Part shown: positions 682 to 62,047 of the stretch, one piece after another | How positions within the stretch are numbered: position 1 is the first letter of the stretch | How the letters are laid out: each line of letters opens with the position of its first letter | IMG/VR virus record: IMGVR_UViG_3300036944_001289 | Span: 124,001-188,000 of that record | Length of the DNA stretch: 64,000 nt | Direction: 5' to 3' (one strand) | Notes under the pieces: model-generated | What the model saw: the letters and a program-made list of their open reading frames with translations, nothing else | Told to the model about the DNA's origin: nothing | Databases searched by the model: none | Translations under genes and position numbers: made by a program

Positions 682-708
682 ATTATAAATATATAATACA
701 ATTATCAA
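682..708 (-). promoter_or_regulatory. sigma70-like promoter of uvsY (TTGATA-N15-TATAAT, 5 nt before ATG)
   Basis: Read directly; overlaps the divergent TAAATA element (686-691) of the 708 ORF. Confidence 0.5.
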
Positions 709-917
709 TGATAAGTTTTAAAAAATTCTATGCTATTTTTAAAGAAGATAGCTCTTACTCAGATGGTACATTAGGGCCTGCTGCAAATGTATCTCACAAT
801 GCAATAGCCAATAGCGATTGGTATGCACCTGGTGACTATAGAATACCAAAAGGTGGTAGAGTATATAGACGCAGTGGTGTTGTAAAGCGTAAAAAGAGAC
901 GTAAATACAAAAAATGA
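708..917 (+). CDS. small basic virion-type protein containing a major-capsid-like YAPGDYRIPK motif
   Basis: Start re-called at ATG 708 (the track ORF extends into uvsY antisense); MISFKKFYAIFKE leader and polybasic C-terminus. Confidence 0.65.
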   Translation: MISFKKFYAIFKEDSSYSDGTLGPAANVSHNAIANSDWYAPGDYRIPKGGRVYRRSGVVKRKKRRKYKK

Positions 918-1339
918 TAACAGATTTTGGTCATTGGATTAATTGCACATCATTAAATGTTGAGGAGTTACCCTATGGCTTTATCTATTTGATAGAGAAT
1001 AAAGTAACAAATAAAAAGTATATAGGTAAAAAACAAATTAAAAGTGTAAAAAAGCTTAAACCATTAAAAGGTAAGAAGAATAAAAGGCATTTTGACGTTG
1101 AGACAGATTGGAAGACTTATACATCTTCTTCTAATGAGGTTAATAGTGACATAGAAAAGTACGGAAAAGATAACTTTTCGTTCTCAATTATAAAATTTTG
1201 TGATTCTAAAAGTGAATTAGCATACTTTGAAGCAAAATTACAATTCGAAGAGAACGTACTATTACGTGAGGATTACTATAACGGTATCATAAATTTGAGA
1301 ATAGGTAAAAATTGTTTTATAAAAAAGTTGAAAACATAA
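914..1339 (+). CDS. GIY-YIG family endonuclease
   Basis: GFIYLIEN...KKYIGKK motif, DWKTY.SSS, conserved E and YYN; type common in T4-like phages. Confidence 0.8.
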   Translation: MITDFGHWINCTSLNVEELPYGFIYLIENKVTNKKYIGKKQIKSVKKLKPLKGKKNKRHFDVETDWKTYTSSSNEVNSDIEKYGKDNFSFSIIKFCDSKSELAYFEAKLQFEENVLLREDYYNGIINLRIGKNCFIKKLKT

Positions 1340-1359
1340 AATACAGTATATAATACAGT

Positions 1360-1917
1360 ATGTCTGTTATATACGATGTTGCTGATGATATTAATATAAT
1401 CGACGTTAATTCGATGTTTGTTGAAAAAACCTACGTAGATATAGTTAATGATTTATATAAGCTAGATCTATTGAAACCTAAAATAACTACAGATGTTAAG
1501 CGAATAATGTATCATCATGTAATACATGATATTTGTGAGTTTTATTTATGTAGTCCTCTTAGAAAACCTGTGGTATTATTCAATAATACTCAGTTAGAAG
1601 ACTGTCTAATCTTTCAATACTTTACAGAAGAAGATATATTGGGCATATTAACAAGTGTATTTGCAAAAATACAAAAGACTTTACCTATTAGATGCTACTT
1701 AAGTAAGTATAGTGGCAAGCATCTAAAGTACAAATCTAACTCTGATGATGGTAAAATACTAAATACCTTGAATTTAATAAAGGAAATTAGTAATTCACCT
1801 GTTAAATCTGATATAACATTCGAGAATATTAAAAAATTTACTAAGAAATACGGATTGATATACTTAAATCAAGAATACTTTACCAGGCTTGCAACTAAAC
1901 ATCTTTATATTCGTTAA
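1360..1917 (+). CDS. hypothetical protein
   Basis: 185 aa ORF with TTGAAA-N15-TATAAT promoter at 1328-1354; weak resemblance to a PIN/5'-nuclease N-terminus only. Confidence 0.6.
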   Translation: MSVIYDVADDINIIDVNSMFVEKTYVDIVNDLYKLDLLKPKITTDVKRIMYHHVIHDICEFYLCSPLRKPVVLFNNTQLEDCLIFQYFTEEDILGILTSVFAKIQKTLPIRCYLSKYSGKHLKYKSNSDDGKILNTLNLIKEISNSPVKSDITFENIKKFTKKYGLIYLNQEYFTRLATKHLYIR

Positions 1918-1934
1918 TAAATATAAATATTATT

Positions 1935-2465
1935 ATGAGTATTTTCGATAAAAAAGCTAACCAGATCATTTCATCATTTTTATTAGAAGGTGTAGATTCC
2001 GGATGCACAGTTGTAAAAGTTTCAACACCAACAGGTAAAGTTGATATTAATGCAAAATGTATACAAACGGCTTCAGGTTTATCATACGTGGCTGATGAAG
2101 TTGTTGAAAATATTAATAAAGGTGACGATATTACCGATCTAGTTGTTACCGATGAAGATGAAGAGTTTGATTTTAAGAAAGCTGATCTTGATAAAGACGG
2201 TAAATTATCTTCATATGAAAAAGCACGTGGTGAGGCAGTAGCAGGTGCTAAAGAAGAGAGCGAAGAAGTAGAAGACCCACAACTTAAGAAAATGGGTTTA
2301 GGTAAAGACGCAATTGCCGCTGTAACAGTTGCAGGTAAATTAGCAACAAAAGCAGGCGGGCTTGGTGCTGCAGCACTAACACAAAACAGAATGAATGCTG
2401 CTTACGGTACATTAATGAGAAAAATTGCTAAAAAGGTCACAGATATTTCAAATAAAATACAATGA
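1935..2465 (+). CDS. late protein with EF-hand-like DLDKDGKLSSYE motif
   Basis: TAAATA 5 nt upstream of ATG; leader ending FLLE; DxDxDG loop. Confidence 0.65.
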   Translation: MSIFDKKANQIISSFLLEGVDSGCTVVKVSTPTGKVDINAKCIQTASGLSYVADEVVENINKGDDITDLVVTDEDEEFDFKKADLDKDGKLSSYEKARGEAVAGAKEESEEVEDPQLKKMGLGKDAIAAVTVAGKLATKAGGLGAAALTQNRMNAAYGTLMRKIAKKVTDISNKIQ

Positions 2466-2812
2466 AATTTTTAAGTAAATTAAATTTTTATAAGAATCAG
2501 CTAATTAATGAAGCTGATGAGGAAGCCCCATTACCTCCTAATACTGAAGAGAATCCAACACCTCAAGAAGCTCAACAAACAGAAGAGCAACCAGCTGAAC
2601 CTGAACAACAAACTAAAGAGCTAACACCAGAAGGTGAAGTTCTTTTAATAAGGTTACTTAAGAAAGCATTCGTAATATCACCCAAACCTGAGGATATAGA
2701 GCAGATGTCTGATATTGATAATATCAACGAAAATAATGCAAGAGAATCTCTATCTAAGATAATAGGTTTAATGAAAAAATATTCTACAGATATAGAGTTA
2801 GATATCGATTAA
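2462..2812 (+). CDS. acidic late protein
   Basis: ATGA overlap with previous gene; MKFLSK...LINE leader; E/P-rich linker. Confidence 0.65.
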   Translation: MKFLSKLNFYKNQLINEADEEAPLPPNTEENPTPQEAQQTEEQPAEPEQQTKELTPEGEVLLIRLLKKAFVISPKPEDIEQMSDIDNINENNARESLSKIIGLMKKYSTDIELDID

Positions 2813-2973
2813 TGAAAAAATTTAAAGAGTTTTTTACAGAACGTAAGGTTATAAAACGTAAATTAAAAAAGAAGCCTGCATACTCTAATAATCAGTATAG
2901 AAATACTGTAAATTATATAAATCAACCACCATATGGTGCTGAAGGTAGAACATTAACACCTACAATTAATTAA
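2812..2973 (+). CDS. 53-aa basic protein with T4 IP-like leader (not in ORF track)
   Basis: Hand translation MKKFKEFFTERKVIKRKLKKKPAY...TPTIN*; TAATG overlap with upstream stop. Confidence 0.6.
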   Translation: MKKFKEFFTERKVIKRKLKKKPAYSNNQYRNTVNYINQPPYGAEGRTLTPTIN

Positions 2974-3766: not shown

Positions 3767-4066
3767 TTACCAGTCCTTACAAGCCATGTATCTAGCTGTA
3801 CCAGGTTTTGCAGTAGAGCACTTATGTCTAGCTCTAAAACTCTTTTTACGTTTAGTATTACCTGATTTACCTGTAACACGTACACCTGCTTGACCCCAAT
3901 GTATGCGCTTAAATCCACCACCAGGCTTACGTACACATTGCATCCACTTCTTACCAGGCCTTGTAGATGATGCCTTTTTAGTTGCCTTCGTGCATCTTGC
4001 TGAAGATTTTTCTTCTAATACATCATATTGTGTTAATAACTGTTCGACAATTACGTTAAAACTCAT
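3767..4066 (-). CDS. basic Cys-containing protein (RKKSFRARHKC...ARYMAC type)
   Basis: Start re-called at 4066; motif typical of a small phage family of unknown function. Confidence 0.65.
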   Translation of the reverse strand: MSFNVIVEQLLTQYDVLEEKSSARCTKATKKASSTRPGKKWMQCVRKPGGGFKRIHWGQAGVRVTGKSGNTKRKKSFRARHKCSTAKPGTARYMACKDW

Positions 4067-4077
4067 AAATATATTTA
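4066..4077. promoter_or_regulatory. palindromic bidirectional late-promoter element TAAATATATTTA
   Basis: Perfect 12-bp palindrome between divergent ATGs at 4066 and 4077; TAAATA on each strand 5 nt from the ATG. Confidence 0.6.
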
Positions 4078-4451
4078 TGGCATCAAACAATAATGATCAG
4101 CAAAAACTTTTCGAAAGTTATATAAGGATATTAAACGAAGATGTAGGTCTTGGACCTAAACATAAGGGTACTGATAATATGAATGTTACTTCAATTGGCT
4201 CTACAGGTAAGCCAGGCACATCACATATGGATATTTCTAAGAGTAATCTTACACCGGCGAGTGAAAACGAAGAAGTTCAGAACTATAAAGGTAGCTTAGA
4301 TCAAGTAATAGATGATATTGTTCAGAATCTAGAATTTATAAGAACTAAGAAACCTGTATTAAAAACAACAGATCGTAAACTATTACTAAAAAGCGTACAA
4401 CATGAAGTTGATCGCGTAGTGCACATAATAAGTAAAGGTGAGATACAATAA
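4077..4451 (+). CDS. late hypothetical protein
   Basis: Start re-called at 4077: MASNNNDQQKLFESYIRILNE. Confidence 0.6.
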   Translation: MASNNNDQQKLFESYIRILNEDVGLGPKHKGTDNMNVTSIGSTGKPGTSHMDISKSNLTPASENEEVQNYKGSLDQVIDDIVQNLEFIRTKKPVLKTTDRKLLLKSVQHEVDRVVHIISKGEIQ

Positions 4452-4651: not shown

Positions 4652-5050
4652 GTGATAACATTTAAGATATTTTTTGAACAAAAAGCCCTCGGTCTAATCG
4701 AGACGATTAATATCGAGGGTATTGGACCTATTGCTGCAAAAGTAGATAGCGGTAACGGTGCCTATAATGTATTACACGGTACAGATGTATCTGTTAAAGG
4801 TGATAAGGTAACTTTTACTACAGTAAATGGTAAGAAGTTAAATAAACCTTTTAAAGGCTATATAGATATCAATATTGGTTCTGGTAATATTGAACAAAGA
4901 CCAACTATAGAGTTTAGTGTATCTATAAATGGAGAAGATCATGAAAATGTACGGTTTTCCATTGCAGATAGAACCCAGAACGAAGAAAAAGTGCTGCTAG
5001 GTAAAGACTTCATAGCAGCACTTGGTGGTTTAATAGACGTAAATAAATAA
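4652..5050 (+). CDS. retropepsin-like aspartic protease (RimK-associated ATP-dependent zinc protease family)
   Basis: AKVDSGN catalytic motif, R-P-x-I, ADR...VLLGKDFI; GTG start 5 nt after TAAATA. Confidence 0.8.
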   Translation: MITFKIFFEQKALGLIETINIEGIGPIAAKVDSGNGAYNVLHGTDVSVKGDKVTFTTVNGKKLNKPFKGYIDINIGSGNIEQRPTIEFSVSINGEDHENVRFSIADRTQNEEKVLLGKDFIAALGGLIDVNK

Positions 5051-6938: not shown

Positions 6939-7322
6939 ATGCGTATCAATAAAGTAATAGAGAATACTTTTAACACATTAAACTTAAAGAGAATCAGACT
7001 TAAAAGTGATCCTAACAATAACATAGTTCCTTATGAAGGTTATGTATTAGAAGAATGTGATGATGGCACTATGCAGATATATGCAATAGGTGCTGAAAAT
7101 CCTTATATGCAAGTAACACCTGATATGGTTGATGTACAGCAATCACTAACACCTTTAGATAAAATTAAGCTTATAATAGCTGGATGCATAGATAAAGGTG
7201 TTGCATGTCAAATTAAAGACTTAAATAATTTATCTGATATTGAAGCAACATTACTTTCAAGTGGATGTACAATGGAAGATATGTATAACATTTTCAAAAA
7301 ATACTTCTTAACAAATGAGTAA
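6939..7322 (+). CDS. late hypothetical protein
   Basis: 127 aa ORF with TAAATA 5 nt upstream. Confidence 0.6.
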   Translation: MRINKVIENTFNTLNLKRIRLKSDPNNNIVPYEGYVLEECDDGTMQIYAIGAENPYMQVTPDMVDVQQSLTPLDKIKLIIAGCIDKGVACQIKDLNNLSDIEATLLSSGCTMEDMYNIFKKYFLTNE

Positions 7323-8505
7323 ATTTTTACAAACAATAAATGAACAAGCTCCTACAGGTAAAATGCCAATTGGTAGTATACCTACAGGTAAAGGTATAAA
7401 GCCACAGCAACCTGTTCCACCTAAACCCACAACCCCACAAAACTATCAGAACAAAAGTTCATTAGGTCAAATAGGTGGCGCTTTAAGAAAAATTGGTTCT
7501 GGATTTCAAAAAGTAAAAGGAGCAGTCTCTGCTGTAAAAGACTTCACAGCTACAGGTGATCTTAGTGTATTACAACAACTTGGACAACAACTAATCAATA
7601 GAGCACTTGATTTAGATACATATAAAATATCTGCTTTTGGTAAAAAGGGATATACAGATGTTTTACTTATCGATGAAGAGTTGATAGCAAAAATTGGATT
7701 ACTAACACCGACAAAAAAAGTTAAAGCAGAGAGCGCAGACATTATTTTACAAAGCGGATTATTGAATGGTAATAAATTCTTACAAGTGTTAAAAGAAGCA
7801 AAACCAGCTGTAAAACAAAAACCGCAAGTTGCTATTGCTCCTCAATTTTTATTTGAACTAACAAAAGAAAGAAATCTAGGTACAAATGGTAAGCAATATA
7901 CGTTAACACCTAAGACACCTGAAGTGCAACAATATCTTAATGATAAAGGTATTAAGTTTGTAACATTTCTACGTGATCCAAATAACTCACCAGAAAATAT
8001 AGTAGGTAATGTCAGATTTGATGATAACTCAGGTAAGTTACAGTTTTATGATCTAGAAAATCAATTTATACAATCATTAGAAACAGAAGTAAAATTTGAA
8101 TATTCACCACAGGATAAACTATATAAAATAGGTTCATCTTTAACAGACCGCTCTTTTGAAGATATAGATCAAACTAAAGAATTACTAAAGAAAGGTATAT
8201 TGCTAATACATCCAAGAGAGAAATTATTTAGATTAGAAGGACCTACACAGGAAGGTAAATTTGCTAATTTTACTAATACACAGACGAAAGAACAATTTCA
8301 CGGTTTGCTAAACACATATCAGACTCCAGATAAAAAGACAAACTTTATTGTAATGTCTAGTATTAAACCTGGGCTAAAACCTTACACACAACCAACTGTA
8401 AGTAAACCAAGTACACCAAAAGTTGTAGCACCTAAGAAGGTTACTAAACCAGTGGCTGCTCCAGCCAAGCCAGCTACAACTGCACCAAATAAAACCACAC
8501 CTTAA
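7315..8505 (+). CDS. late hypothetical protein with P/K-rich ends
   Basis: 396 aa ORF; MSKFLQTINE leader. Confidence 0.65.
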   Translation: MSKFLQTINEQAPTGKMPIGSIPTGKGIKPQQPVPPKPTTPQNYQNKSSLGQIGGALRKIGSGFQKVKGAVSAVKDFTATGDLSVLQQLGQQLINRALDLDTYKISAFGKKGYTDVLLIDEELIAKIGLLTPTKKVKAESADIILQSGLLNGNKFLQVLKEAKPAVKQKPQVAIAPQFLFELTKERNLGTNGKQYTLTPKTPEVQQYLNDKGIKFVTFLRDPNNSPENIVGNVRFDDNSGKLQFYDLENQFIQSLETEVKFEYSPQDKLYKIGSSLTDRSFEDIDQTKELLKKGILLIHPREKLFRLEGPTQEGKFANFTNTQTKEQFHGLLNTYQTPDKKTNFIVMSSIKPGLKPYTQPTVSKPSTPKVVAPKKVTKPVAAPAKPATTAPNKTTP

Positions 8506-12715: not shown

Positions 12716-13231
12716 ATGAATAATAGAGAGAACGAACTTATTTTCGAAAAGTACATGGGTACTAATAAACAGGTTGAGAGTTTAAACGAAGGTCTTATTG
12801 ATCGTATTAAGTCAAAAGCAGCAGGTGCTGTAGGTGCTGTACAAGGTATGGGTAAACAAGTATCTGGTAAAGTTAAAGGTGCAATAGCAGGTGCTAAAGG
12901 TAATGTAGCTGGTGTTAAACAAGCTACAATACAAGTTCAGCAAGGAAAGACCGCAGGTCCAGTAGCTAAAGTACAATCTTATAGAAATACAGCTATCAAA
13001 AAGTTTGACAAAGTTTCAAACGAAGTCTTTACTGATTTACAAAAGCTAGGTATTGACTTGAAAAAAATATCTCCACAAAGTCTCAATAATTTTAAGAGCA
13101 ATCTAAACAAAGCATTTGATGAAGTAATTAGTAACATCAAAGGTACATCTGGCAAGGCAACAACCAAGGCAACAACCAAGGCAACAACCAAGCCAAAACC
13201 AAAAGTAGCCGCACCTACTAGTACACCATAA
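12716..13231 (+). CDS. late basic protein
   Basis: TAAATA 5 nt upstream; ELIFEKY...SLNE leader; G/A/K-rich. Confidence 0.65.
   Translation: MNNRENELIFEKYMGTNKQVESLNEGLIDRIKSKAAGAVGAVQGMGKQVSGKVKGAIAGAKGNVAGVKQATIQVQQGKTAGPVAKVQSYRNTAIKKFDKVSNEVFTDLQKLGIDLKKISPQSLNNFKSNLNKAFDEVISNIKGTSGKATTKATTKATTKPKPKVAAPTSTP
13154..13192 (+). repeat. 12-bp tandem repeat AAGGCAACAACC x3 (KATT)
   Basis: Read directly. Confidence 0.95.
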
Positions 13232-39885: not shown

Positions 39886-41340
39886 TTAGAAGTAAACTGA
39901 CTGATTGCCAGGTGTGAATGCCTGACCGAGTCCGCTTACTATAATAACGTGGTAGTAGAGGTTTGCGCCGAAAATGTTGTCTACAACACCGTAACGGGTT
40001 AATAGACCAACACGTGGTGCAAAGTCGTTCTGACCAATGGTGCGTTGTACCATAACAGGTATGTATGGGCAGTAGATGATACCGGTATCGTAGAATTCTG
40101 GACCCTTGTAGCCAAGTAGTGCATATTCTGGACGATTTGTAGTATCAACGTATTGACCTTCTGTTCTGGTGTCTCTGTAAACCTGGAAACGACCACCAAG
40201 GCTACCTACCTTAGCAACACCGACTGGCTGTGTGTTAACATTGCCTTGAACTGGTACCCATTGGAATTCAGGTAGCATTTCAAGGATTGCGCAAACGCGA
40301 GGTGTTGCAACAATGAAGTTTGCAGCGCCACGACGATTACGTACAGCAATACGGTTAGCTTCGATAATTAGTCTTTGATAGAAGTCACGGTTACGTTCGA
40401 CCAACCAACGGCCATCTGCTGAAGCAGGAGACCAGATAGAATAACCAACGCCAGCACCTGCATTGAGGGCGACTTGGATCATTCTAATAATCATTTCACG
40501 GTCGATTTCGGCCTGAATTTCATAGCTCATAGCGTTTGTTAATTCAGTGTCGATATCAATACCGTTCATGTTCTTGAGGTCTTGCTCAAGCTCTACGGAC
40601 CAGCGGGCGCCTAAGCGTCTTGTACCAGCTTCAACAGCAGTCTTTTCAAATGAAACTTCAAATGTCGGAATGTTTTCCGAGATTTCAAAGCTTGATAGAA
40701 GAGCTGCTACACCGTTATTTTGACCGTTATTAATAAAATTAACGGGCAATGCAGAGCTACCAGAAAGGTAGGCTGCGGATGTACCGGTGTAAGCACTGTT
40801 AAGGTACTGATAGCCTGCTTCCTGACCAGCTGCAGAGGTAAGAATACCAGACTGACCGGCAGGAGCGTTGCCATTAGAACCTAAAGTGCTACCTGTGTAG
40901 CGATAACGAAGAGCGAATGCGAGACCTACTGGACCAGCCATTGGTTGAACGCCGACAATTTCGTTAGAGATAAGCTCTGGGAAAGTACGGCGGATCATGG
41001 GGATCAAGATTTTTGGAAGACGGTAGTCACCAGGTGCGTATGTATCTGTACCAGGTGTACCGGTAGAGTTCCATGAGTTCATACCTGCTGTGCCACCAAC
41101 TGCACCACCGAAACCGGCAGTATTAACTGTACCGGATGGGTTGTAGTTAGGACCAGCTTCGTTAACCATACACCATTGCTCTTGGTTTTCCAATAGCATT
41201 GCTGTATTTAAACGGGTGTGGTTGTCTTCAATCGGAGCAACGTTCTTAGAAGAGTAATCCAAAACTGGACCCCACTTCTCAAGAAGCGCCTTTGCTCTTG
41301 ATTCATTGATATATGCTTGTGTAGGACGAATAGTGTTCAT
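39886..41340 (-). CDS. major capsid protein gp23
   Basis: LLEKW.PVL, TA.LLENQ, VGVQPMAGPVGLAFALR, RRL.ARWSVELEQDLK, EIDRE, YCPYIP, TRYG. Confidence 0.97.
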   Translation of the reverse strand: MNTIRPTQAYINESRAKALLEKWGPVLDYSSKNVAPIEDNHTRLNTAMLLENQEQWCMVNEAGPNYNPSGTVNTAGFGGAVGGTAGMNSWNSTGTPGTDTYAPGDYRLPKILIPMIRRTFPELISNEIVGVQPMAGPVGLAFALRYRYTGSTLGSNGNAPAGQSGILTSAAGQEAGYQYLNSAYTGTSAAYLSGSSALPVNFINNGQNNGVAALLSSFEISENIPTFEVSFEKTAVEAGTRRLGARWSVELEQDLKNMNGIDIDTELTNAMSYEIQAEIDREMIIRMIQVALNAGAGVGYSIWSPASADGRWLVERNRDFYQRLIIEANRIAVRNRRGAANFIVATPRVCAILEMLPEFQWVPVQGNVNTQPVGVAKVGSLGGRFQVYRDTRTEGQYVDTTNRPEYALLGYKGPEFYDTGIIYCPYIPVMVQRTIGQNDFAPRVGLLTRYGVVDNIFGANLYYHVIIVSGLGQAFTPGNQSVYF

Positions 41341-41420: not shown

Positions 41421-42275
41421 TTAGTACTTACCTAATTCTTTTAGGTAAGGAGAAATTTGTTGCACGCCTTCTGTGATCACTTCTTCTGTCTGTTCTGTAA
41501 CAACATGATCAACATCTTGGCGCTCATTTAGTGCTTCTTCTTTCAAGACTTCGAGTCTATCTGTTAATTTCTTATTGAAGAGTTTGACTGTGTAATCAAA
41601 ATTTTCATTTATAAATTCCAGCGATTTGCCAGCCATTACTTTCTTAACGTAATATTTTTCTTGATCGTTAAGTTTGGCGGTTTTTTGTTCTAGAATCAAA
41701 CCAGCTTGTATTTGCTGTAGGGATTCTTTTAACATAGCGTTTTCGCTTTGGATAGACTCAAGCTTTTTAGAAGCTTCATTTATTTGGTTTTTACCATCAA
41801 GCACTGCATCTTTGATAGAATCTCTTTCAAGTGCAGATGTGACAGCTAAAGTGTTTCGTAGTGATTCAAGTAGTTTGGCTGCTTTCTTGTTTTTAACAGC
41901 TTCTTGAATGTCAGCAGCAGGTACTATCTCTTCAAGATAAGCTTCGAGATAGTCACTGATAGATTCAACTAAGGTTTGTTTAAACTTCTTAGCATCTTCA
42001 TTTAGTGTTCTCTCATACTTAGAAACAACCTTCTTAAGTTTGTTTGCTCTATCTAGTTCAATAGCTTCTACTACCTTTTCTAATTTAATTGTATGATCTT
42101 TATCAATAGCTTCGAGTAGTTGCTCGAGCTTCTTAGTATAAAGTTCATCTTGTTCAGCAAGAGCTTTCTCAACATGGAGTTCAACTTTTGCTTTTACCTT
42201 TGATTCAATAGCCTCTTGAATCATTTTTAAAGATTCAGGTGAGAGGTCTTTTAATTGTTCGTTAATATTCTCCAT
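41421..42275 (-). CDS. prohead core scaffold gp22
   Basis: Acidic coiled coil between gp21 and gp23, multiple (L/I)xE sites. Confidence 0.85.
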   Translation of the reverse strand: MENINEQLKDLSPESLKMIQEAIESKVKAKVELHVEKALAEQDELYTKKLEQLLEAIDKDHTIKLEKVVEAIELDRANKLKKVVSKYERTLNEDAKKFKQTLVESISDYLEAYLEEIVPAADIQEAVKNKKAAKLLESLRNTLAVTSALERDSIKDAVLDGKNQINEASKKLESIQSENAMLKESLQQIQAGLILEQKTAKLNDQEKYYVKKVMAGKSLEFINENFDYTVKLFNKKLTDRLEVLKEEALNERQDVDHVVTEQTEEVITEGVQQISPYLKELGKY

Positions 42276-42474: not shown

Positions 42475-43137
42475 TTATAATTTATTTATAAAACTAAGAA
42501 TCGCGCTACGTAGATATTGATCTTTATCGGAGCGAGGTAAAGTTATTAACTTCTTTTCAAAAGTATCATATAATTCTTCATAATGTCCATTCTCTCTCAA
42601 TACATATTGTTTAGATTCGAGAATACCATTAACAAACGCTTTACCGAAACTTGGATCTGCAACGCAATCGATTGCTACTAGTCTAAAATCTTTTACTCTA
42701 TTACAACCGTTTGATTCAGGTATTAATTGCCCTAAAGCTCTAGAACTCATACCAACTTTAACACCGTCGTTAATAAGTGAGCGAACTATAAGACCTGTAG
42801 GTGTTGATAGTACTTTACTTTTACCGTAAAATACATTACCATCTCTTTTTAGTTCTGTAACTAAGTGACAGACTCTAGATAGATCTACGTCAGCTGTGGT
42901 AGGGTGATTAAGTTCACCCATTGCTCTACCAGGCTTAATCATATCATCTTCGTAGCGCTGAACTTCACGGACCATTTCATCGATAGGATATAGACGCTTA
43001 TTTCTATTGACACCCTCTGCCATCATATATGGCCCCTTTATATAGAGTGTTCTAGGTTCATTAGCATTACGCTCTTCAACGATATAAGAAAAATCGTTGT
43101 TATTAGTAGGTGTCTCAACTATTAGTCTAAAACTCAT
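42475..43137 (-). CDS. prohead protease gp21
   Basis: NRNKRLYP, GELNHP, GMSSRALG, DCVADPS. Confidence 0.95.
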   Translation of the reverse strand: MSFRLIVETPTNNNDFSYIVEERNANEPRTLYIKGPYMMAEGVNRNKRLYPIDEMVREVQRYEDDMIKPGRAMGELNHPTTADVDLSRVCHLVTELKRDGNVFYGKSKVLSTPTGLIVRSLINDGVKVGMSSRALGQLIPESNGCNRVKDFRLVAIDCVADPSFGKAFVNGILESKQYVLRENGHYEELYDTFEKKLITLPRSDKDQYLRSAILSFINKL

Positions 43138-51113: not shown

Positions 51114-51506
51114 TTAGTTATAATGCTTTAATAGAGTCGCAAGCATTTCCAGTTTTGTTGTAATCTGACTATATTTTTTAAGCTTCTTCATTTCGGATAC
51201 AGAATCAACAGTTTTATCTATCAAATTTTTTAGTTGATTTTTAGTCATCTTACCGTATCCTTTTACCATAATTTCTTCACTTTCACTAAACGAACCTGAT
51301 GCTCCTGGAATACCTGCAGTGTTTGTTTTAGCTGAATTACCTGGTAAGTTACTAGTACTGTTAGCATTAGCGTAGCTGTTCTTTACGTCAGATGTTGGCA
51401 TATTATTATGTGCTTGATTTTTTTGCTGTGTATCAGCAATAGCCCACATATTGAGACCGCTTTCATACAACATACCTATCTGCTTTATGTCATTAAGTTT
51501 ATCCAT
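51114..51506 (-). CDS. late hypothetical protein
   Basis: TAAATA 5 nt upstream; MLYE leader. Confidence 0.6.
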   Translation of the reverse strand: MDKLNDIKQIGMLYESGLNMWAIADTQQKNQAHNNMPTSDVKNSYANANSTSNLPGNSAKTNTAGIPGASGSFSESEEIMVKGYGKMTKNQLKNLIDKTVDSVSEMKKLKKYSQITTKLEMLATLLKHYN

Positions 51507-55007: not shown

Positions 55008-55020
55008 CATAAATATTAAC

Positions 55021-55269
55021 ATGGCAAAATTTGACGACTTAATAAAGCACATACTTAGTGAATCACCAGCACCTGCTATTACACCAGAAAAACCTACAGT
55101 AAAACCTGGCACAAAACCAGAAACACCAAGTAAACCATCTAAACCAGAACATCCTTTTGCACCTAAACCAGGTATAAAACCACGCCCTGATGCAAAGAAG
55201 AAATCACGTGAAGAGAATGAAGAAAATGCTGATGTTAAGTTATTTTTATCACACCGTCGTAAAAAATGA
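55021..55269 (+). CDS. Pro/Lys-rich late protein
   Basis: TAAATA 5 nt upstream; MAKFDDLIKHILSE; KP repeats. Confidence 0.65.
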   Translation: MAKFDDLIKHILSESPAPAITPEKPTVKPGTKPETPSKPSKPEHPFAPKPGIKPRPDAKKKSREENEENADVKLFLSHRRKK

Positions 55270-56423: not shown

Positions 56424-56807
56424 ATGGAAAATATTTTTCTTACACAATATATAAATGAAGCTTTTGATACAAAATCTTTAGCAGCTCATAGAAAAAGTCT
56501 AATATCTAAATACGGTAAAAAGGGTACGACAAGTGTAAAAGACGTAATAATAACTCCAGAGAAATTACAAATGCTCAAGACTATCAGAAATGATATGGGA
56601 TTATTTAATGAAGGTGAGCCTGCACCAGCTTGGAATAGTTTTACAGCAGCGCTACTAAACAATATAAAAACCAATCCAGTTTTTGTTAAGAAGATGCTAT
56701 CTAACGAGCAAACAGCTAAAAAATTTATAGCGTCCTTTATATTAAAGTTTAGACGCGAAATTGAAAGTACTTCCAGCTACCTTAGCGAAAAATTAAAGAC
56801 TGGTTAA
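56424..56807 (+). CDS. late hypothetical protein
   Basis: MENIFLTQYINE leader. Confidence 0.6.
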   Translation: MENIFLTQYINEAFDTKSLAAHRKSLISKYGKKGTTSVKDVIITPEKLQMLKTIRNDMGLFNEGEPAPAWNSFTAALLNNIKTNPVFVKKMLSNEQTAKKFIASFILKFRREIESTSSYLSEKLKTG

Positions 56808-57611
56808 GTCGTTATACATTTGTATATCTTCTGTACTATACTGCTTAGTTAGTTGCTTAAACTCACCAGGTAATATTTGTTTACCATCAATGTAATACTC
56901 CATAATATCAGGTAGAACTGAGCCTGATGGACTAGTCATACCATAAAAATTAATTATAATGGCAGGGCCTGTTAGACGGTGAAGCTGACCGTGTTTTAAC
57001 CACTTTGTTTCCTTAGTTTTACTAAAAGAAGAAGGCTGTAAGATATAAGCAGGTTTATCATCTTCTCTGTGTAATCTATTTTGAGGATCACGATACTGTA
57101 TAAGTTCTCTATTGCTGGCTGTTATAGAAGTTTGTTTCTTGTATTGTAACTTACCTTCAATATAAAAATCTTCATCTTTAAACTTACCGCTTCCTTGTGA
57201 AATATATACATTTGCAGGTCCACCTATACGGTGATACTTGCCATTTTTGTACCATTCTTGTGATTCTATCTTACCATTTTTTATAGTAGTTTTAGCAGGG
57301 CCATTCTCCCTGTTCAACTTACCGTGTGTATACCAAGCTTCAATATGATGTATATTGGGATACTCTTGTATAATCTCATTAAGATTTAACTCTAGAGACC
57401 ATTCATTATCAGTTAAAATCATAGCAGGTCCATCATCTCTATGTAATCTACCTTGTTTATCTCTCCATGATTTTCTGGTATATACTTCGTCGAATGCTGA
57501 ACTATCTCTTTTAGATACGTGTGTTCGAGTAGTTTTCTCTACATCAGTAGGTGGTATAAGATACTTACTCTTAAGGCCTTCCTGTAAATAAAATTTTTTA
57601 AACGATAACAT
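56793..57611 (-). CDS. LHRxDGPA-repeat protein with shared C-terminal tag
   Basis: Five degenerate repeats; MLSFKKFYLQE leader. Confidence 0.8.
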   Translation of the reverse strand: MLSFKKFYLQEGLKSKYLIPPTDVEKTTRTHVSKRDSSAFDEVYTRKSWRDKQGRLHRDDGPAMILTDNEWSLELNLNEIIQEYPNIHHIEAWYTHGKLNRENGPAKTTIKNGKIESQEWYKNGKYHRIGGPANVYISQGSGKFKDEDFYIEGKLQYKKQTSITASNRELIQYRDPQNRLHREDDKPAYILQPSSFSKTKETKWLKHGQLHRLTGPAIIINFYGMTSPSGSVLPDIMEYYIDGKQILPGEFKQLTKQYSTEDIQMYNDLTSL

Positions 57612-57988
57612 TACGAATTAAGGTCGTTTAGTATATCAAGATCTTCATCAGTGTAATCTTTAGCTGCTTGAGATACTTCATTAGGTAAGACTTCTTTACC
57701 TTTAATATAGTATTTCTTCTCGATGAGAGAACCGTCTTGATCATACTCTTCTAAAGCAGGACCTTTTATATTGTGTAATTGACCATCTCTATAATGAGAT
57801 ATAAGTTTAGGCTTACCATCTTTATAGAATAGCTCTACAGCAGGACCACTCTCATTATGCAGTACTTTAGTACTTGGCTTAAAAACGACATTAACACCTA
57901 CTACACCATTACCCCAATTTAAAGTGTAAGCATTACTACCAGTCTCAGACATTTCATTTAAGATTTCTAGAAGAGCGTTGAAATTCAT
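57611..57988 (-). CDS. LHRxDGPA-repeat protein with shared C-terminal tag
   Basis: Two repeats; MNFNALLEILNE leader. Confidence 0.8.
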   Translation of the reverse strand: MNFNALLEILNEMSETGSNAYTLNWGNGVVGVNVVFKPSTKVLHNESGPAVELFYKDGKPKLISHYRDGQLHNIKGPALEEYDQDGSLIEKKYYIKGKEVLPNEVSQAAKDYTDEDLDILNDLNS

Positions 57989-58005
57989 ATGTTAATATTT
58001 ATTAT

Positions 58006-58554
58006 TTATGAATTTAAGTCATCTAAGATATCTAAGTCTTCTTTATCATATTGCTTAGTTAGCTGTTTAAATTCATTTGGTGTTAGTTCTTTACCATCTA
58101 TATAGTACTCTTCTTCTATTTTATCACCATTTTGATTCCACACTTGACTAGCAGGACCATCTAAGCGATGAAGCTTGCTATCTTTATACCATTCTTCACT
58201 TCGCCTTTTACCATTTTTATGCCATGATTGATAAGCAGGTCTATCTAACCTATAACGTTTATTATCTCTAAACCATTCTTCAATATGTTTTTGACCATCT
58301 ATATACCACAGTTGAACAGCAGGACCATCTAAGCGATGAAGCTTGCTATTCTTAAACCACTCTTCAAATTCTTTTTGACCATTTTTATACCACCATTGAC
58401 GAGCAGGACCATCTAATCTATGAAATTCACCATCTTTAAGCCATTCTTCAGACTTAAGCTTTGTATCATCCTCATCCCAATACGTATGTATAACTTTAAT
58501 ATCTTGGTAATCTTCAATATTCTCTACTAATAAAATCAATTGATCAAACTTCAT
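58006..58554 (-). CDS. LHRLDGPA-repeat protein (4 x 28 aa) with shared C-terminal tag
   Basis: 84-bp repeat units; MKFDQLILLVE leader. Confidence 0.85.
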   Translation of the reverse strand: MKFDQLILLVENIEDYQDIKVIHTYWDEDDTKLKSEEWLKDGEFHRLDGPARQWWYKNGQKEFEEWFKNSKLHRLDGPAVQLWYIDGQKHIEEWFRDNKRYRLDRPAYQSWHKNGKRRSEEWYKDSKLHRLDGPASQVWNQNGDKIEEEYYIDGKELTPNEFKQLTKQYDKEDLDILDDLNS

Positions 58555-58562
58555 AAGATTAT

Positions 58563-59186
58563 TTATGAATTTAAGTTATCTAATATATCCATATCTTCTT
58601 TATCGTATTGCTTAGTTAGTTGTTTAAGCTCATTTGGTGGTATTTCTTTACCGTTTATATAGTACTCTTCAATCATCTTTTGACCATCTTCATCCCACTC
58701 TTGACTAGCAGGACCATCTAAGCGATGAAGCTTGCTATCTTTATACCATTCTTCAAATTCTTTTTGACCATTTTTATACCAATCTTGACGAGCAGGTCCA
58801 TCTAAGCGATGAGGTCTACCATCTATATAGTACTCTTCAATCATCTTTTGACCATTTGTATACCAGTATTGACGAGCAGGTCCATCTAATCTATGAAATT
58901 CATCATCTCTAAACCATTCTTCAATATATTTTTGACCATCTATATACCACAGTTGAACAGCAGGACCATCTAAGCGATGAAGCTTGTTATCTTTATACCA
59001 TTCTTCAAATTCTTTTTGACCATTTTTATACCACCCTTGACGAGCAGGACAATCTAATCTATGAGGTTTACCATCTTTATACCAATACTCCTCCTTAGGT
59101 TTTGTCTCAGCATCATCCCAGTACACTCTTTCAACTCGAATATTTTCATTATCTTCTGCTAATAAAACTAAATCTTTAAACTTCAT
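58563..59186 (-). CDS. LHRLDGPA-repeat protein (5 x 28 aa) with shared C-terminal tag
   Basis: 84-bp repeat units; MKFKDLVLLAE leader. Confidence 0.85.
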   Translation of the reverse strand: MKFKDLVLLAEDNENIRVERVYWDDAETKPKEEYWYKDGKPHRLDCPARQGWYKNGQKEFEEWYKDNKLHRLDGPAVQLWYIDGQKYIEEWFRDDEFHRLDGPARQYWYTNGQKMIEEYYIDGRPHRLDGPARQDWYKNGQKEFEEWYKDSKLHRLDGPASQEWDEDGQKMIEEYYINGKEIPPNELKQLTKQYDKEDMDILDNLNS

Positions 59187-60306: not shown

Positions 60307-60318
60307 TGCTAATTACTT

Positions 60319-60681
60319 TTAGTCAATGCTGGGTTCTGAATCTTCGTCATCCGAATCCATATCTTCATCTTCTACATCCTCCACCATATCATTCTTCTTA
60401 ACCTTACCTGCCGCAATCAAACGACGCGCTTCCTTTTGCGCCTCCTTAAACTCTTCATACTTAGCCTTGCGACGAGCCTCCTTTTCCTCAGCCTCAATCT
60501 TATTCTTAGCTTCCGCTGCCAATTCCATCTCTTCCATATGCTGAATGGCCGCATCCAAAATTGCGGTCATCGTATCTTTTTCCGTCAAGTTAAGCTTCTT
60601 GCGGATTTCGATAATGCGATTCTTATCGGCTTCATGGAGTAGAGCTGCGGTGAACTTGGCTGGCACTTTTAGGGTCTTCAT
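60319..60681 (-). CDS. RHH-like DNA-binding protein with coiled coil and acidic tail
   Basis: beta-strand then two helices (KFTAALLHEADKNRIIEIRKKLNLTEKDTMTAILDAAI); visibly higher GC than the bulk genome. Confidence 0.5.
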   Translation of the reverse strand: MKTLKVPAKFTAALLHEADKNRIIEIRKKLNLTEKDTMTAILDAAIQHMEEMELAAEAKNKIEAEEKEARRKAKYEEFKEAQKEARRLIAAGKVKKNDMVEDVEDEDMDSDDEDSEPSID

Positions 60682-61196
60682 TTTAGTAGTTAGTTTGTTG
60701 TTGTTGTTAATAAGGGCTCTATCGGCCCTACATTTATATTACTAAAGTTCCGTTGTAAGAGTTGAAGGAGGATCCGAGGAAAAATAAGTCCTAAGCTTTT
60801 CAGAAAAGTAAAAAATGCAAGCCGCACTTTTCTGAAAAAATAGAATACACCTTTCATACCTGACTTTTCTGAAAAGCTTTGAATGCTGCTTCCAATTCGT
60901 AAACCACTTTTCGAGGAACTTTGATATTATAAAGTTTAAGGGTCTATATTTTTCCTGTATACTATTTCAGTTCCTGCGTTTCGTACGCATTAAAATGCAA
61001 GGCTTTATATGATACTAATATAAAAGAAGCTTACAAGTACGCAGGAACAAGTACTTGTGCCTAGTAAGCAGGAACTGGAACAGAGTACTATATAGCCGTA
61101 CTAAGAATCGGAACAATAAGAAAGGAGAGCCGCATAAAGCAGACTCTCCTTGTTCCTATATACTAGCTAACTAAAACTGTTCCTAGATACTATTGA

Positions 61197-61379
61197 TTAC
61201 TTACTAATCTTATCATCGACCTTATTTGAGAAGTATAGCATGATATAACCGAATACTGCCATCTTAATGATTACTAGTACTTGCATTACTAGAGTAGTTT
61301 GTTGCTTGAATGTAGCTCCTTCTAAGATAGCCAGTATTAGAAAGAATAGTGTTAGTAGTAGATTGATAGCTGTACGCAT
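61197..61379 (-). CDS. small two-TM membrane protein
   Basis: Two hydrophobic helices in 60 aa. Confidence 0.5.
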   Translation of the reverse strand: MRTAINLLLTLFFLILAILEGATFKQQTTLVMQVLVIIKMAVFGYIMLYFSNKVDDKISK

Positions 61380-61439
61380 ATAGTATGATCTAATATGTAT
61401 ATGAGGTTCTTATATCCAAGAATAACAATGTGTTTCGGG

Positions 61440-61469
61440 GCTCTCAGAGCGCTGTTTGTCTCTGAGAGC
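61440..61469. other. GC-rich hairpin without U-tract
   Basis: GCTCTCAGAG-N10-CTCTGAGAGC. Confidence 0.6.
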
Positions 61470-61510
61470 TGGGCGGGGCTATGATATCAGTGAGTGGGTT
61501 CTGTGAATGG

Positions 61511-62047
61511 TTAACTCATCTCGTCTAACCAGTTTTTGTAATAGGCTCTACCAGCTTTTGCTGCATTTGGACCACCTATAAATAGTGTTAACCCACCTGA
61601 ACCTACTACGAAACGTGGACCTCCACTTTGTTTATACAAAATCTCAGTGCAAGCCAAAATTGTAAGCTTACCACTAGCAATTGAATTAAAGAATGATAAT
61701 GGATCATCCACGAGTGTGATGTCTTTTGTTTTGAATACTCCTTTAGCAATAGCATCTTCGATAGTTAATTTAGCCTCGTCTGCATCTGGACCTGGTTTAC
61801 CAGTGTCGACGAATTCATAAGGCATATGTAGCATAAGGTCTTCAAACCCATAATTAGTGTAGATGTCTGAATTATTATCTTCTGGTAAAATTATAAAACA
61901 GGTTGGATCATCACCAAGACTATCATAGTTATCTTCGCACCTTACTACCGCGTTAGCTACTTTTGTTCCGTAGTCCTCGTCGGTGTTCTCTTTATAGATA
62001 GAAGCATAAGCTTCTGAAATTAACTTATAATCATGTTTGTCTTTCAT
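61511..62047 (-). CDS. acidic late protein
   Basis: TAAATA 5 nt upstream; KLISEAY...YKE leader. Confidence 0.65.
   Translation of the reverse strand: MKDKHDYKLISEAYASIYKENTDEDYGTKVANAVVRCEDNYDSLGDDPTCFIILPEDNNSDIYTNYGFEDLMLHMPYEFVDTGKPGPDADEAKLTIEDAIAKGVFKTKDITLVDDPLSFFNSIASGKLTILACTEILYKQSGGPRFVVGSGGLTLFIGGPNAAKAGRAYYKNWLDEMS

What the first reader, a model, noticed from the sequence alone, without database searches (positions are those of the whole stretch)
708..62047. More than 20 ORFs begin with a T4 IP-like capsid-targeting leader ending at an (L/I)xE protease site
Seen: MKKFKEFFTE (2812), MITFKDYFLIE (44496), MLSFKKFYLQE (57611), MKFKDLVLLAE (59186), MKFDQLILLVE (58554), MAKFDDLIKHILSE (55021), MKFSTYYKLDE (27599), MGFNKLVKFLLE (28391), MSKFLQTINE (7315), MKFNKKIFE (55266), MNFNALLEILNE (57988) and others; many have a TAAATA late element, and others are coupled to a gene that does. 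Known: T4 internal proteins use MKT(Y/F)xEF..E leaders removed by gp21 after (L/I)xE, and IPI* is an injected inhibitor of the GmrSD nuclease. Inference: this phage packages and injects a very large cargo, including enzymes, well beyond the few T4 IPs.
Basis: partly seen in the sequence, partly recalled or inferred. Interest (0 to 1): 0.7.

Follow-up and report, generated by a model that had tools for sequence, protein, structure and literature searches.

The report
Capsid-targeting leaders on many phage proteins
A distant, uncultured relative of phage T4 puts a short T4-like "address tag" ending in a protease cutting site on the front of about 13 to 22 otherwise unrelated late proteins in this window, which most likely sends them into the phage head, several times more than T4 itself is known to pack.

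Summary
All 11 quoted N-termini are at the stated coordinates. The motif is about four times more frequent than chance. It is enriched in late operons. It recurs in a 185-kb relative but not in T4 or a cyanophage.

The window lies in a 209-kb, 32% GC T4-like phage from a shale-gas metagenome. Its head module encodes a gp21-type protease, and that protease has an LIVE|T self-cleavage site like T4's.

The leader has the form M-x(0-2)-F-x-x-(L/F/Y)-hydrophobic ... (L/I/F)-x-E. This places an aromatic or hydrophobic pair where T4's targeting residues 4 and 7 sit, and an (L/I)-x-E where T4's processing residues 8 and 10 sit.

The leader sits on unrelated proteins:
- small lysine-rich proteins
- MORN-repeat proteins
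- a methyltransferase-like protein
- a DUF5754 protein

All 119 aligned DUF5754 homologues keep a hydrophobic-x-E site 1-5 residues before the domain (one further homologue keeps it 9 residues before). The three leader-bearing homologues checked on long contigs lie in T4-like genomes. Podophage homologues lack the leader.

I count 13 strong and about 9 weak members in the window. "More than 20" therefore holds only under a loose definition.

Packaging and cleavage are well-supported inferences. Injection and the "enzymes" claim remain unproven. The principle is known, so this is a new variant on an unusual scale.

The parts
708..917 (+). 69-aa lysine/arginine-rich ORF, MISFKKFYAIFKE|D; strong leader match, no TAAATA directly upstream
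   Evidence: 13.7 bits with the relatives-only leader profile; pI 10.4, C-terminal KRKKRRKYKK
1935..2465 (+). 176-aa ORF, MSIFDKKANQIISSFLLE|G; weak member, first gene of a late operon
   Evidence: TAAATA 5 nt before ATG; 4.5 bits with the leader profile
2462..2812 (+). 116-aa acidic ORF, MKFLSKLNFYKNQLINE|A; weak member, coupled to w1935
   Evidence: 6.2 bits
2812..2973 (+). 53-aa very basic ORF, MKKFKEFFTE|RK; the leader closest to T4 IPII/IPIII MKTYQEFIAE
   Evidence: start overlaps the stop of w2462
3767..4066 (-). 99-aa basic DUF5754 protein, MSFNVIVE|QLLTQYDVLEE|KSSARC; leader lies outside the conserved domain
   Evidence: late promoter; DUF5754 at residues 34-81; 119 of 119 aligned homologues have hydrophobic-x-E 1-5 aa before the first Cys of the domain, and one further homologue has it 9 aa before; podophage homologues lack the leader
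4077..4451 (+). 124-aa ORF, MASNNNDQQKLFE|SYIRILNE|D; weak member, divergent from w4066
   Evidence: late promoter at 5 nt
4652..5050 (+). 132-aa RimB-like retropepsin, (GTG) MITFKIFFE|QK; doubtful member
   Evidence: late promoter; Atlas 0.97 to RimB-like clusters, with the fold spanning the whole length; N-terminus kept in G001
6939..7322 (+). 127-aa ORF, MRINKVIE|N; weak member
   Evidence: late promoter
7315..8505 (+). 396-aa Pro/Lys-rich ORF, MSKFLQTINE|Q; coupled to w6939; no relatives found
12716..13231 (+). 171-aa basic ORF, MNNRENELIFE|KY; weak member of the (I/L)(F/Y)E type
   Evidence: late promoter
27599..28162 (+). 187-aa cell-wall hydrolase (Hydrolase_2), (GTG) MKFSTYYKLDE|SLKTKLKALGLAGLAALTP; ambiguous, either packaged or a signal-anchor endolysin
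   Evidence: 12.5 bits; leader kept in the G001 orthologue MQTFNEYVIEE|GKLGKIAAMGALAAS
28164..28391 (-). 75-aa very basic ORF, MGFNKLVKFLLE|GG; the best leader match
   Evidence: 20.5 bits with the relatives-only profile; late promoter; pI 11.5; G001 orthologue MNFNTLVKDILE|D
39886..41340 (-). Major capsid protein gp23; predicted maturation site ...WCMVNE|AGPNY after Glu61
   Evidence: Pfam Gp23 7e-90; alignment to T4 gp23; C-(L/I/M)-x-E|(A/G) kept in 9 relatives
41421..42275 (-). Scaffold protein gp22 with 17 (L/I)xE sites in 284 aa
   Evidence: T4_CASP and phrog_237; site count
42475..43137 (-). Prohead protease gp21 (Peptidase_S77), N-terminus MSFRLIVE|TP
   Evidence: Pfam 7.8e-30; matches T4 gp21 structure 5JBL; LIVE|(T/S) in 17 of 17 relatives; T4 gp21 has LLIE|T and cleaves off nine residues
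43651..44496 (-). 281-aa leader protein in the head module, MITFKDYFLIE|RK; class I methyltransferase-like fold from residue 15
   Evidence: sits in a variable slot between the gp13-like and gp4-like genes, filled by other leader-bearing genes in relatives
51114..51506 (-). 130-aa conserved late protein, MDKLNDIKQIGMLYE|SG; (L/I/M)(F/Y)E near the N-terminus in all relatives; possible prohead core protein
   Evidence: late promoter; 24 of 24 non-redundant homologues
55021..55269 (+). 82-aa Pro/Lys-rich basic ORF, MAKFDDLIKHILSE|SP
   Evidence: late promoter; 15.2 bits; orthologue in L003
55266..56423 (+). 385-aa acidic ORF, MKFNKKIFE|AI; coupled to w55021
56424..56807 (+). 127-aa basic ORF, MENIFLTQYINE|AF; coupled to w55266
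56793..57611 (-). 272-aa MORN_2-repeat protein, MLSFKKFYLQE|GL
57611..57988 (-). 125-aa MORN_2-repeat protein, MNFNALLEILNE|MS
58006..58554 (-). 182-aa MORN_2-repeat protein, MKFDQLILLVE|NI
   Evidence: late promoter
58563..59186 (-). 207-aa MORN_2-repeat protein, MKFKDLVLLAE|DN
   Evidence: late promoter; only the phage-clade homologues carry the leader, generic MORN_2 proteins do not
61511..62047 (-). 178-aa acidic ORF, MKDKHDYKLISE|AY; weak member with no Phe at 3/4
   Evidence: late promoter

Best explanation
The short N-terminal leaders are capsid-targeting propeptides of the T4 kind.

Proposed mechanism:
1. The genes are expressed late from TAAATA promoters.
2. The proteins carry an amphipathic helix with Phe at residue 3 or 4, a second hydrophobic residue three positions on, and usually one more helical turn. 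This helix docks them onto the scaffold core of the assembling prohead.
3. The gp21-type protease (w42475-43137) then cuts after the Glu of the closing (L/I/F)-x-E. This frees the mature protein inside the head, while the scaffold (17 such sites) is degraded and gp23 is trimmed.

What is shown: the motif, its excess over chance, its late context, its modular presence on unrelated proteins, its conservation at domain boundaries, and the presence of the protease.

What is inferred: docking, cleavage and retention in the head.

More weakly inferred, by analogy with the T4 internal proteins: the small lysine-rich members bind DNA, and some members enter the host with the DNA.
For: 1. T4-type head module with Peptidase_S77, T4_CASP scaffold, Gp23 and Portal_T4.

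2. Protease specificity appears conserved.
- Protease N-terminus LIVE|(T/S) in 17 of 17 relatives, against T4 LLIE|T.
- gp23 has C-(L/I/M)-x-E|(A/G) near residue 60 in 9 relatives.
- The scaffold has 17 sites.

3. The leader pattern matches the mapped T4 determinants, residues 4 and 7 for targeting and 8 and 10 for processing (alignment; T4 IPII/IPIII sequence).

4. Excess over chance and coupling of the two halves of the motif.

5. A profile built only from 11 non-homologous ORFs of relatives was scored at 10 bits or more.
- This genome: 11 of 2523 candidate starts.
- G001: 5 of 1898.
- T4: 0 of 1871.
- P-RSM4: 0 of 3411.
- In T4, the three internal proteins rank 3rd, 16th and 21st of 1871.

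6. Late-operon enrichment: 19 of 103 against 9 of 209.

7. Modularity.
- Only four tandem genes are paralogues.
- MORN_2 homologues outside the clade lack the leader.
- 119 of 119 aligned DUF5754 homologues keep hydrophobic-x-E 1-5 residues before the domain, whatever the leader length; one further homologue has it 9 residues before.
- The three leader-bearing homologues checked on long contigs lie in T4-like genomes, one of them inside the head module next to Peptidase_S77.
- Podophage homologues start directly at the domain.

8. Seven members are small and very basic, like the T4 internal proteins.
Against: - There are no virion proteomics, N-terminal sequences or transcript data. The phage is known only from metagenomes.
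- The protease-leader complex prediction gave no answer: 0.32 against a mark of 0.34.
- Mature parts are not clearly depleted in internal (L/I)xE: observed/expected 0.94 against 1.22 for the proteome, not significant.
- The clade profile recognises T4 IPII/IPIII only weakly, at 4.5-5.2 bits.
- P3 is Phe in some strong members.
- Some members have other plausible readings: a signal-anchor endolysin at w27599 and a fold-intrinsic N-terminus at w4652.
- About 5 strict matches are expected by chance.
Confidence: 0.68

Rival explanations
1. The leader is a general N-terminal amphipathic helix with another role in late proteins, such as folding or chaperonin recognition, membrane association, or assembly elsewhere in the virion. 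Under this reading the closing (L/I)xE is a helix-capping habit, not a protease site.
For: No direct evidence of cleavage or encapsidation exists. The complex prediction was inconclusive. There is no clear depletion of internal sites. The profile matches T4 IPII/IPIII only weakly.
Against: - The Glu-ending site tracks the domain boundary in 119 of 119 aligned DUF5754 homologues, whatever the leader length.
- The same site type is conserved at the protease N-terminus and at the gp23 maturation point.
- The leader is absent from podophage homologues and from generic MORN_2 proteins.
- Leader genes occupy a slot inside the head module.
Confidence: 0.15
2. The leaders do target proteins to the prohead, but the proteins are mostly core or scaffold components. 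They would be degraded or stay in the head, so they are not an injected arsenal.
For: In T4, gp67 and gp68 are core proteins degraded to peptides, and not all packaged proteins have known post-injection roles. The 130-aa family w51114-51506 is conserved in every relative like a structural gene. Several members contain internal (L/I)xE sites.
Against: - Many members are poorly conserved, swapped or absent between close relatives. Cargo identity is 55-84% where the portal is 95%, and the slot contents differ. This suits accessory cargo more than core parts.
- Small lysine-rich members resemble the T4 internal proteins, which are injected.
Confidence: 0.1
3. The motif is a by-product of composition, of shared ancestry of paralogues, or of nucleotide-level constraints on translation start of apparently leaderless late mRNAs.
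For: - The genome is 32% GC and rich in K, F, I, L, N and E.
- Four members are tandem paralogues.
- TAAATA sits exactly 5 nt before many start codons, so the first codons could matter for initiation.
Against: - Shuffles and internal-position controls give 4.5-4.9 against 19 observed.
- T4 and P-RSM4 controls give no hits at 10 bits or more.
- Most members are unrelated in their mature parts.
- Highly expressed late genes with the same promoter spacing (gp23, portal, sheath-region genes) lack the motif.
- Hydrophobic positions are kept by different amino acids with different codons.
Confidence: 0.05

Closest known systems
Capsid targeting sequence (CTS) of T4 internal proteins IPI, IPII and IPIII, removed by the gp21 prohead protease
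   Same: - A 10-19-residue propeptide at the extreme N-terminus.
- An aromatic or hydrophobic pair three residues apart, followed by (L/I)-x-E.
- Late expression.
- A gp21-type protease in the same genome.
- The tag sits on unrelated, often small basic proteins.
- w2812 MKKFKEFFTE against T4 MKTYQEFIAE.
   Different: - The consensus has Phe, not Tyr, at the first aromatic position.
- It is usually one helical turn longer (8-14 residues).
- P3 is sometimes Phe.
- There are about 13-22 carriers in this 64-kb window, against three IPs in T4.
- No mature part is homologous to a T4 IP.
- Nothing has been shown experimentally.
CTS-like leaders on variable basic proteins of other T-even phages (T2, T6 and others)
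   Same: The same leader on diverse, poorly conserved proteins. This is read as an arms-race cargo set (PMC9026906, PMC3012670). Here too the carriers are swapped between close relatives.
   Different: Those phages are close relatives of T4 infecting enterobacteria and carry a handful of such genes. This clade is only about 33-35% identical to any cultured phage in gp23, and its carrier set is several times larger.
Processed head, inner-body and ejection proteins of phiKZ, 201phi2-1 and SPN3US
   Same: A large set of head-internal proteins processed after Glu by a gp21-related protease. N-terminal propeptides are thought to aid incorporation (PMC5694885).
   Different: Their motif is (S/A/G)-x-E, often with propeptides over 100 residues. 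Here P3 is L/I (sometimes F or V), the leaders are short, and the head genes are T4-type rather than phiKZ-type.
T4 gp24, gp21 and Alt N-terminal propeptides
   Same: Short N-terminal peptides ending in (L/I)-x-E: gp24 MAKINELLRE|S, gp21 MNEPQLLIE|T, Alt MELITELFDE. This phage's protease has MSFRLIVE|T.
   Different: Those are single structural or enzymatic head proteins. No gp24 or Alt homologue was looked for here.

Membership tests
T4-type capsid targeting sequence (CTS) propeptide | Short (10-19 aa) propeptide at the extreme N-terminus of the precursor | tested here: met
   Leaders of 8-18 residues start at the initiator Met. For most members the start codon is fixed by TAAATA exactly 5 nt upstream.
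T4-type capsid targeting sequence (CTS) propeptide | Targeting determinants: aromatic/hydrophobic residues at positions 4 and 7 (T4 IPIII Tyr4, Phe7) | tested here: met
   Phe at position 3 or 4, with L/F/Y/V/I three residues later, in all 24 aligned leaders. This half is coupled to the cleavage half in 25 of 30 cases. This is a sequence pattern only. The T4 determinants are taken from PMC9026906.
T4-type capsid targeting sequence (CTS) propeptide | Processing determinants: Leu/Ile at P3 and Glu at P1 | tested here: met
   (L/I)xE with Glu at residues 9-14 is enriched, 43 against 19.9. In the 119 aligned DUF5754 homologues P3 is L or I in 109, and V, M or F in 10. Exceptions in the window are Phe at P3 in w2812 and w708.
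T4-type capsid targeting sequence (CTS) propeptide | A gp21-type (Peptidase_S77) prohead protease and T4-type scaffold in the same genome | tested here: met
   w42475-43137 matches Peptidase_S77 at 7.8e-30 and PDB 5JBL at 6.6e-17. w41421-42275 matches T4_CASP.
T4-type capsid targeting sequence (CTS) propeptide | Late expression together with head genes | tested here: met
   By promoter motif only: 19 of 103 late-operon genes against 9 of 209 others carry the motif. No RNA data exist.
T4-type capsid targeting sequence (CTS) propeptide | Recognisable sequence likeness to the T4 CTS itself | tested here: inconclusive
   The relatives-only profile ranks T4 IPI 3rd, IPIII 16th and IPII 21st of 1871 T4 candidate starts, but at only 4.5-7.3 bits.
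T4-type capsid targeting sequence (CTS) propeptide | The leader is sufficient to bring a protein into the prohead and is cleaved there | not testable with these tools
   This needs fusion and encapsidation experiments or virion N-terminomics. The protease-leader complex prediction gave no answer.
T4 internal proteins IPI/IPII/IPIII (as protein families) | Homology of the mature protein to IPI, IPII or IPIII | tested here: not met
   No PHROG or Pfam match of any member to internal virion protein families.
T4 internal proteins IPI/IPII/IPIII (as protein families) | Delivery into the host with the DNA, and anti-restriction activity (IPI* against GmrSD) | not testable with these tools
   No isolate or host is known. 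The genome comes from shale-gas metagenomes.
phiKZ-type processed inner-body/ejection proteins | Cleavage motif (S/A/G)-x-E and phiKZ-type head genes | tested here: not met
   P3 is L/I (sometimes V, M or F). The head genes are T4-type.
Signal-anchor-release (SAR) endolysin (considered for w27599-28162 only) | Muralytic domain preceded by a weakly hydrophobic Gly/Ala-rich N-terminal segment | tested here: inconclusive
   Hydrolase_2 domain at residues 76-184. The segment LKALGLAGLAALTP follows the leader and is similar in G001. No membrane-topology tool was available.

The most novel reading that the evidence does not exclude
A whole clade of uncultured T4-like phages (marine, freshwater and subsurface) uses one generalised capsid-targeting leader to load 15-25 different proteins per genome into the head. 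The load would include MORN-repeat proteins, DUF5754 basic proteins and a methyltransferase-like enzyme. A large part of it would be injected as a fast-evolving takeover and anti-defence arsenal. If so, the leader can serve as a sequence tag to read out the 'injected proteome' of uncultured phages directly from metagenomes.
Probability: 0.35. Interest if true: 0.75.

Novelty: new variant of a known kind. Interest (0 to 1): 0.58.

Why it matters
Packaged internal proteins are the first phage proteins to meet the host. T4 IPI* is the textbook injected inhibitor of a restriction system.

If the leader found here marks packaged proteins, it gives a simple sequence handle for listing candidate injected proteins in uncultured T4-like phages. 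A search of the PHROGs and Pfam libraries names almost none of the carriers here.

It would also show that the CTS principle, worked out in T4, operates on a much larger scale in a distant and environmentally widespread clade. It gives DUF5754 proteins a first functional context. The leaders could also extend the T4 protein-packaging toolkit.

Tried and rejected
- Protease-leader complex prediction: 0.32 against a mark of 0.34, controls 0.00-0.01. The tool's verdict was 'no answer', so it is not used as evidence.
- Depletion of internal (L/I)xE in mature parts, as a sign of exposure to the protease: 0.94 against 1.22 for the proteome, too weak to use.
- The first leader profile included window sequences and was circular. 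I replaced it with a profile from 11 relatives' ORFs that have no homologue in the window. Neither profile ranks T4 IPII/IPIII highly.
- Relatives of the left-hand cluster: w7315 found only an identical contig, and FolE2 found an unrelated phage.
- Megablast of the head module against the phage collection: no match.
- Sequencing runs: only DNA metagenomes hold the phage.
- Chance, paralogy and translation-signal explanations were considered and rejected on the controls.
- w4652 (RimB-like) and w27599 (hydrolase) were downgraded to doubtful or ambiguous members.

Full report
**What the window is.** The 64-kb window is bases 124001-188000 of a single 209,282-bp contig with about 32% GC. Two shale-gas metagenome runs hold 95-96% of its sampled words, and no RNA run holds it.

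The window carries a T4-type head module on the minus strand (gp13-like):

| Gene | Coordinates | Evidence |
|---|---|---|
| Portal gp20 | w45706-47475 | Portal_T4, 1e-99 |
| gp13-like protein | w44518-45666 | |
| gp4-like head completion protein | w43172-43621 | |
| Prohead protease gp21 | w42475-43137 | Peptidase_S77, 7.8e-30; PDB 5JBL, 6.6e-17 |
| Scaffold gp22 | w41421-42275 | T4_CASP |
| Major capsid protein gp23 | w39886-41340 | Gp23, 7e-90 |

The phage is distant from cultured ones. The best gp23 matches in the phage collection are cyanophages at 33-35% identity. IMG/VR holds many relatives with 68-95% portal identity, including a 185-kb contig that I fetched whole as G001.

**Check of the observation.** All 11 quoted N-termini are at the stated places.
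- The strict pattern ^M.{1,3}F.{2,10}[LI].E fits 19 of 324 called ORFs. Shuffling residues 2-18 gives 4.5 (maximum 11 in 500 shuffles), and internal positions give 4.9.
- A statistic that does not depend on my reading of the motif is the position of the Glu of any (L/I)xE. It shows a peak at residues 9-14: 43 ORFs against 19.9 expected (P=5e-6).
- The same peak is present in G001 (31 against 14.5, P=1e-4). It is absent from 107 kb of T4 (15 against 10.0) and from cyanophage P-RSM4 (15 against 10.6).
- The two halves of the motif go together. Of 30 non-redundant N-termini that begin M-x(0-2)-F-polar-polar-hydrophobic-hydrophobic, 25 have (L/I/F)xE at residues 8-16, against 177 of 798 others.

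**A non-circular profile.** I built a profile from 11 leaders of relatives' ORFs that have no homologue in this genome and scored candidate starts at 10 bits or more.

| Genome | Starts at 10 bits or more | Candidate starts |
|---|---|---|
| This genome (G000) | 11 | 2523 |
| Relative G001 | 5 | 1898 |
| T4 | 0 | 1871 |
| Cyanophage P-RSM4 | 0 | 3411 |

In T4 the three internal proteins rank 3rd (IPI), 16th (IPIII) and 21st (IPII) of 1871. That is a real but weak likeness.

**Late expression.** TAAATA ends exactly 5 nt before the start codon in 43 of 293 genes, including 12 candidates in the window. Other candidates overlap or abut the stop of a late gene (w2462, w2812, w7315, w55266, w56424, w57611). 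Counting late operons, 19 of 103 late genes carry the motif, against 9 of 209 others (odds ratio 5, P=9e-5). Two of the nine 'others' are late genes with a variant spacing or promoter, one of them the protease.

**Anatomy of the leader.** The aligned leaders read M-(x)0-2-F-(K/D/N)-x-(L/F/Y)-(V/I/Y/F)-(0-4 residues)-(L/I/F)-x-E. This is an amphipathic helix closed by a Glu.
- In T4 IPIII (MKTYQEFIAE), mutational work placed targeting at residues 4 and 7 and processing at residues 8 and 10 (PMC9026906).
- The leaders here put Phe and a second hydrophobic residue at the matching spacing, with (L/I)-x-E at the end.
- w2812 (MKKFKEFFTE) matches position for position.

**The protease's specificity seems conserved.**
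- The protease starts MSFRLIVE|TP, and LIVE|(T/S) is found in 17 of 17 relatives. T4 gp21 starts MNEPQLLIE|T and removes nine residues from itself (PMC9958956).
- gp23 aligns to T4 gp23 through the propeptide. It carries C-(L/I/M)-x-E|(A/G) near residue 60 in all nine relatives. In the window the site is VNE|AG after Glu61.
- The scaffold has 17 (L/I)xE sites in 284 residues.

**The leader is a module, not a family trait.** Only the four tandem genes w56793-59186 are paralogues; they are MORN_2 repeat proteins. All other candidates are unrelated in their mature parts.
- Among 120 homologues of the MORN_2 protein, only the nearest, phage-clade ones carry the leader. Generic MORN_2 proteins do not.
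- w3767-4066 is a DUF5754 protein whose domain starts at residue 34. In 119 of 119 aligned homologues a hydrophobic-x-E (L or I in 109) lies 1-5 residues before the first conserved Cys, although leader length ranges from 13 to over 50 residues. One further homologue has the site 9 residues before.
- Leader-bearing homologues on long contigs lie in T4-like genomes. One sits next to baseplate, tube and sheath genes. One sits next to gp32, UvsX and DNA polymerase. One lies between the gp13-like and gp4-like genes, beside Peptidase_S77, the scaffold and Gp23.
- Homologues in Flavobacterium, Pelagibacter and Roseobacter podophages start directly at the domain, with no leader and no site.
- The slot between the gp13-like and gp4-like genes holds a different leader-bearing gene in different relatives. 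Examples are MTFNDLVQFYLNE, MKFRDLVNMLNE and MKFDDLVNYILKE. In the window it holds the 281-aa w43651-44496.

**What the carriers are.**
- Seven are small and very basic (pI 10-11.5, up to 38% K+R, poly-Lys tails), like the T4 internal proteins.
- w43651-44496 has a class I methyltransferase-like predicted fold from residue 15 (TM 0.5-0.6). This is a lead only.
- w27599 is a cell-wall hydrolase whose leader is followed by a Gly/Ala-rich hydrophobic segment, so it may be a signal-anchor endolysin.
- w4652 is a RimB-like retropepsin whose 'leader' may be part of the fold.
- The rest have no family match.
- Between the window and the 95%-portal relative L003, core head genes are 90-98% identical while leader-bearing genes are 55-84% identical, and the set differs.

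**Count.**
- In the window I rate 13 members as strong: w708, w2812, w3767-4066, w27599 (ambiguous function), w28391, w43651-44496, w55021, w55266, w56424, w57611, w57988, w58554 and w59186.
- About 9 are weak or doubtful: w1935, w2462, w4077, w4652, w6939, w7315, w12716, w51506 and w62047.
- Outside the window there are at least six more, at genome positions 39148, 40009, 83388, 90235, 93593 and 94073.
- A second, looser N-terminal type, (I/L/M)(F/Y)E, marks the conserved 130-aa family w51114-51506 in 24 of 24 relatives.

**Interpretation.** These are T4-type capsid-targeting propeptides that dock late proteins onto the prohead core and are cut off by the gp21-type protease.
- Shown here: the motif, its statistics, its late context, its modularity and the presence of the protease.
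- Inferred: docking, cleavage and retention in the head.
- A further inference by analogy: injection.
- The complex prediction gave no answer, and internal-site depletion was not significant.

**Comparison and novelty.** The principle is known: a CTS on diverse internal proteins in T-even phages, and Glu-specific processing of many head proteins in phiKZ-like phages (PMC3012670, PMC9026906, PMC5694885). Three things are new here.
- The setting is a distant, uncultured and widespread T4-like clade.
- The consensus differs: Phe-based and a helical turn longer.
- The scale is larger: roughly 13-22 carriers in this window and about 20-25 in the genome, against three IPs in T4 and none detectable in a cyanophage.

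The carriers include MORN_2 and DUF5754 proteins. The held literature returned nothing describing this. That is not proof that it is undescribed.

Noticed in passing
whole genome; in the window e.g. 1924-1937, 28392-28402, 55010-55023, 59187-59197: TAAATA ends exactly 5 nt before the start codon in 43 of 293 genes (11 more at 6 nt), and there is no Shine-Dalgarno peak. If the T4 distance from late promoter to +1 holds, late mRNAs would start at or next to the AUG and so be leaderless.
   Followed up: partly
whole genome, upstream of many non-late genes (e.g. genome 19618-20031, 26948-28522, 47597-48244): GGAAC lies 16-17 nt before the ATG, followed by an ATA(C/A)AAT-like element. The spacing is too short for a normal -35/-10 pair. 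This may be a phage-specific early or middle promoter.
   Followed up: no
window 5065-6060 (-), 8837-9469 (+), 10560-11330 (+); genome 110536-111288: Genes for 7-deazaguanine synthesis are present: FolE2 (GCHY-1, 2.6e-68), a QueD-like PTPS, a radical-SAM QueE-like protein and a QueC-like protein. This suggests a modified base in the DNA.
   Followed up: partly
window 14461-21429 (+), perhaps to 24420: A run of glycosyltransferase genes (two GT2, one GT47-like, one GT1/GT4) and a Methyltransf_24-like gene, with several unassigned genes of similar size.
   Followed up: partly
window 56793-59186 (-): The tandem MORN_2 genes all end in ...DLDIL(N/D)DLNS. The last codons, TTA AAT TCA TAA, overlap the late promoter of the next gene. 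Relatives keep the same tail.
   Followed up: partly
window 4055-4087: Two late promoters back to back drive divergent genes w4066(-) and w4077(+). A longer ORF at 3903-4451 called mechanically is probably not the real gene.
   Followed up: partly
window 42279-42473 (-): A 64-aa extremely basic ORF (MRKKHKIKEKVKKHSKRS...) lies between the protease and the scaffold and has its own late promoter. It is conserved in relatives. It may be a core or internal protein without the Phe-type leader.
   Followed up: no
window 281-676 (-), 914-1339 (+), 9676-10476 (-): A UvsY-like protein (below cut-off), a SegE-like GIY-YIG homing endonuclease (2.3e-30) and PhoH (1.9e-53).
   Followed up: no
window 59200-61200: About 2 kb with only short, doubtful ORFs between the MORN_2 array and w61511-62047. 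No tRNA was found in the window. It was not searched for RNA families.
   Followed up: no
genome 37000-44700 (outside the window): A stretch where mechanical ORF calling gives many short overlapping ORFs with tRNA-like translations. It is probably a tRNA gene cluster. It was not scanned.
   Followed up: no
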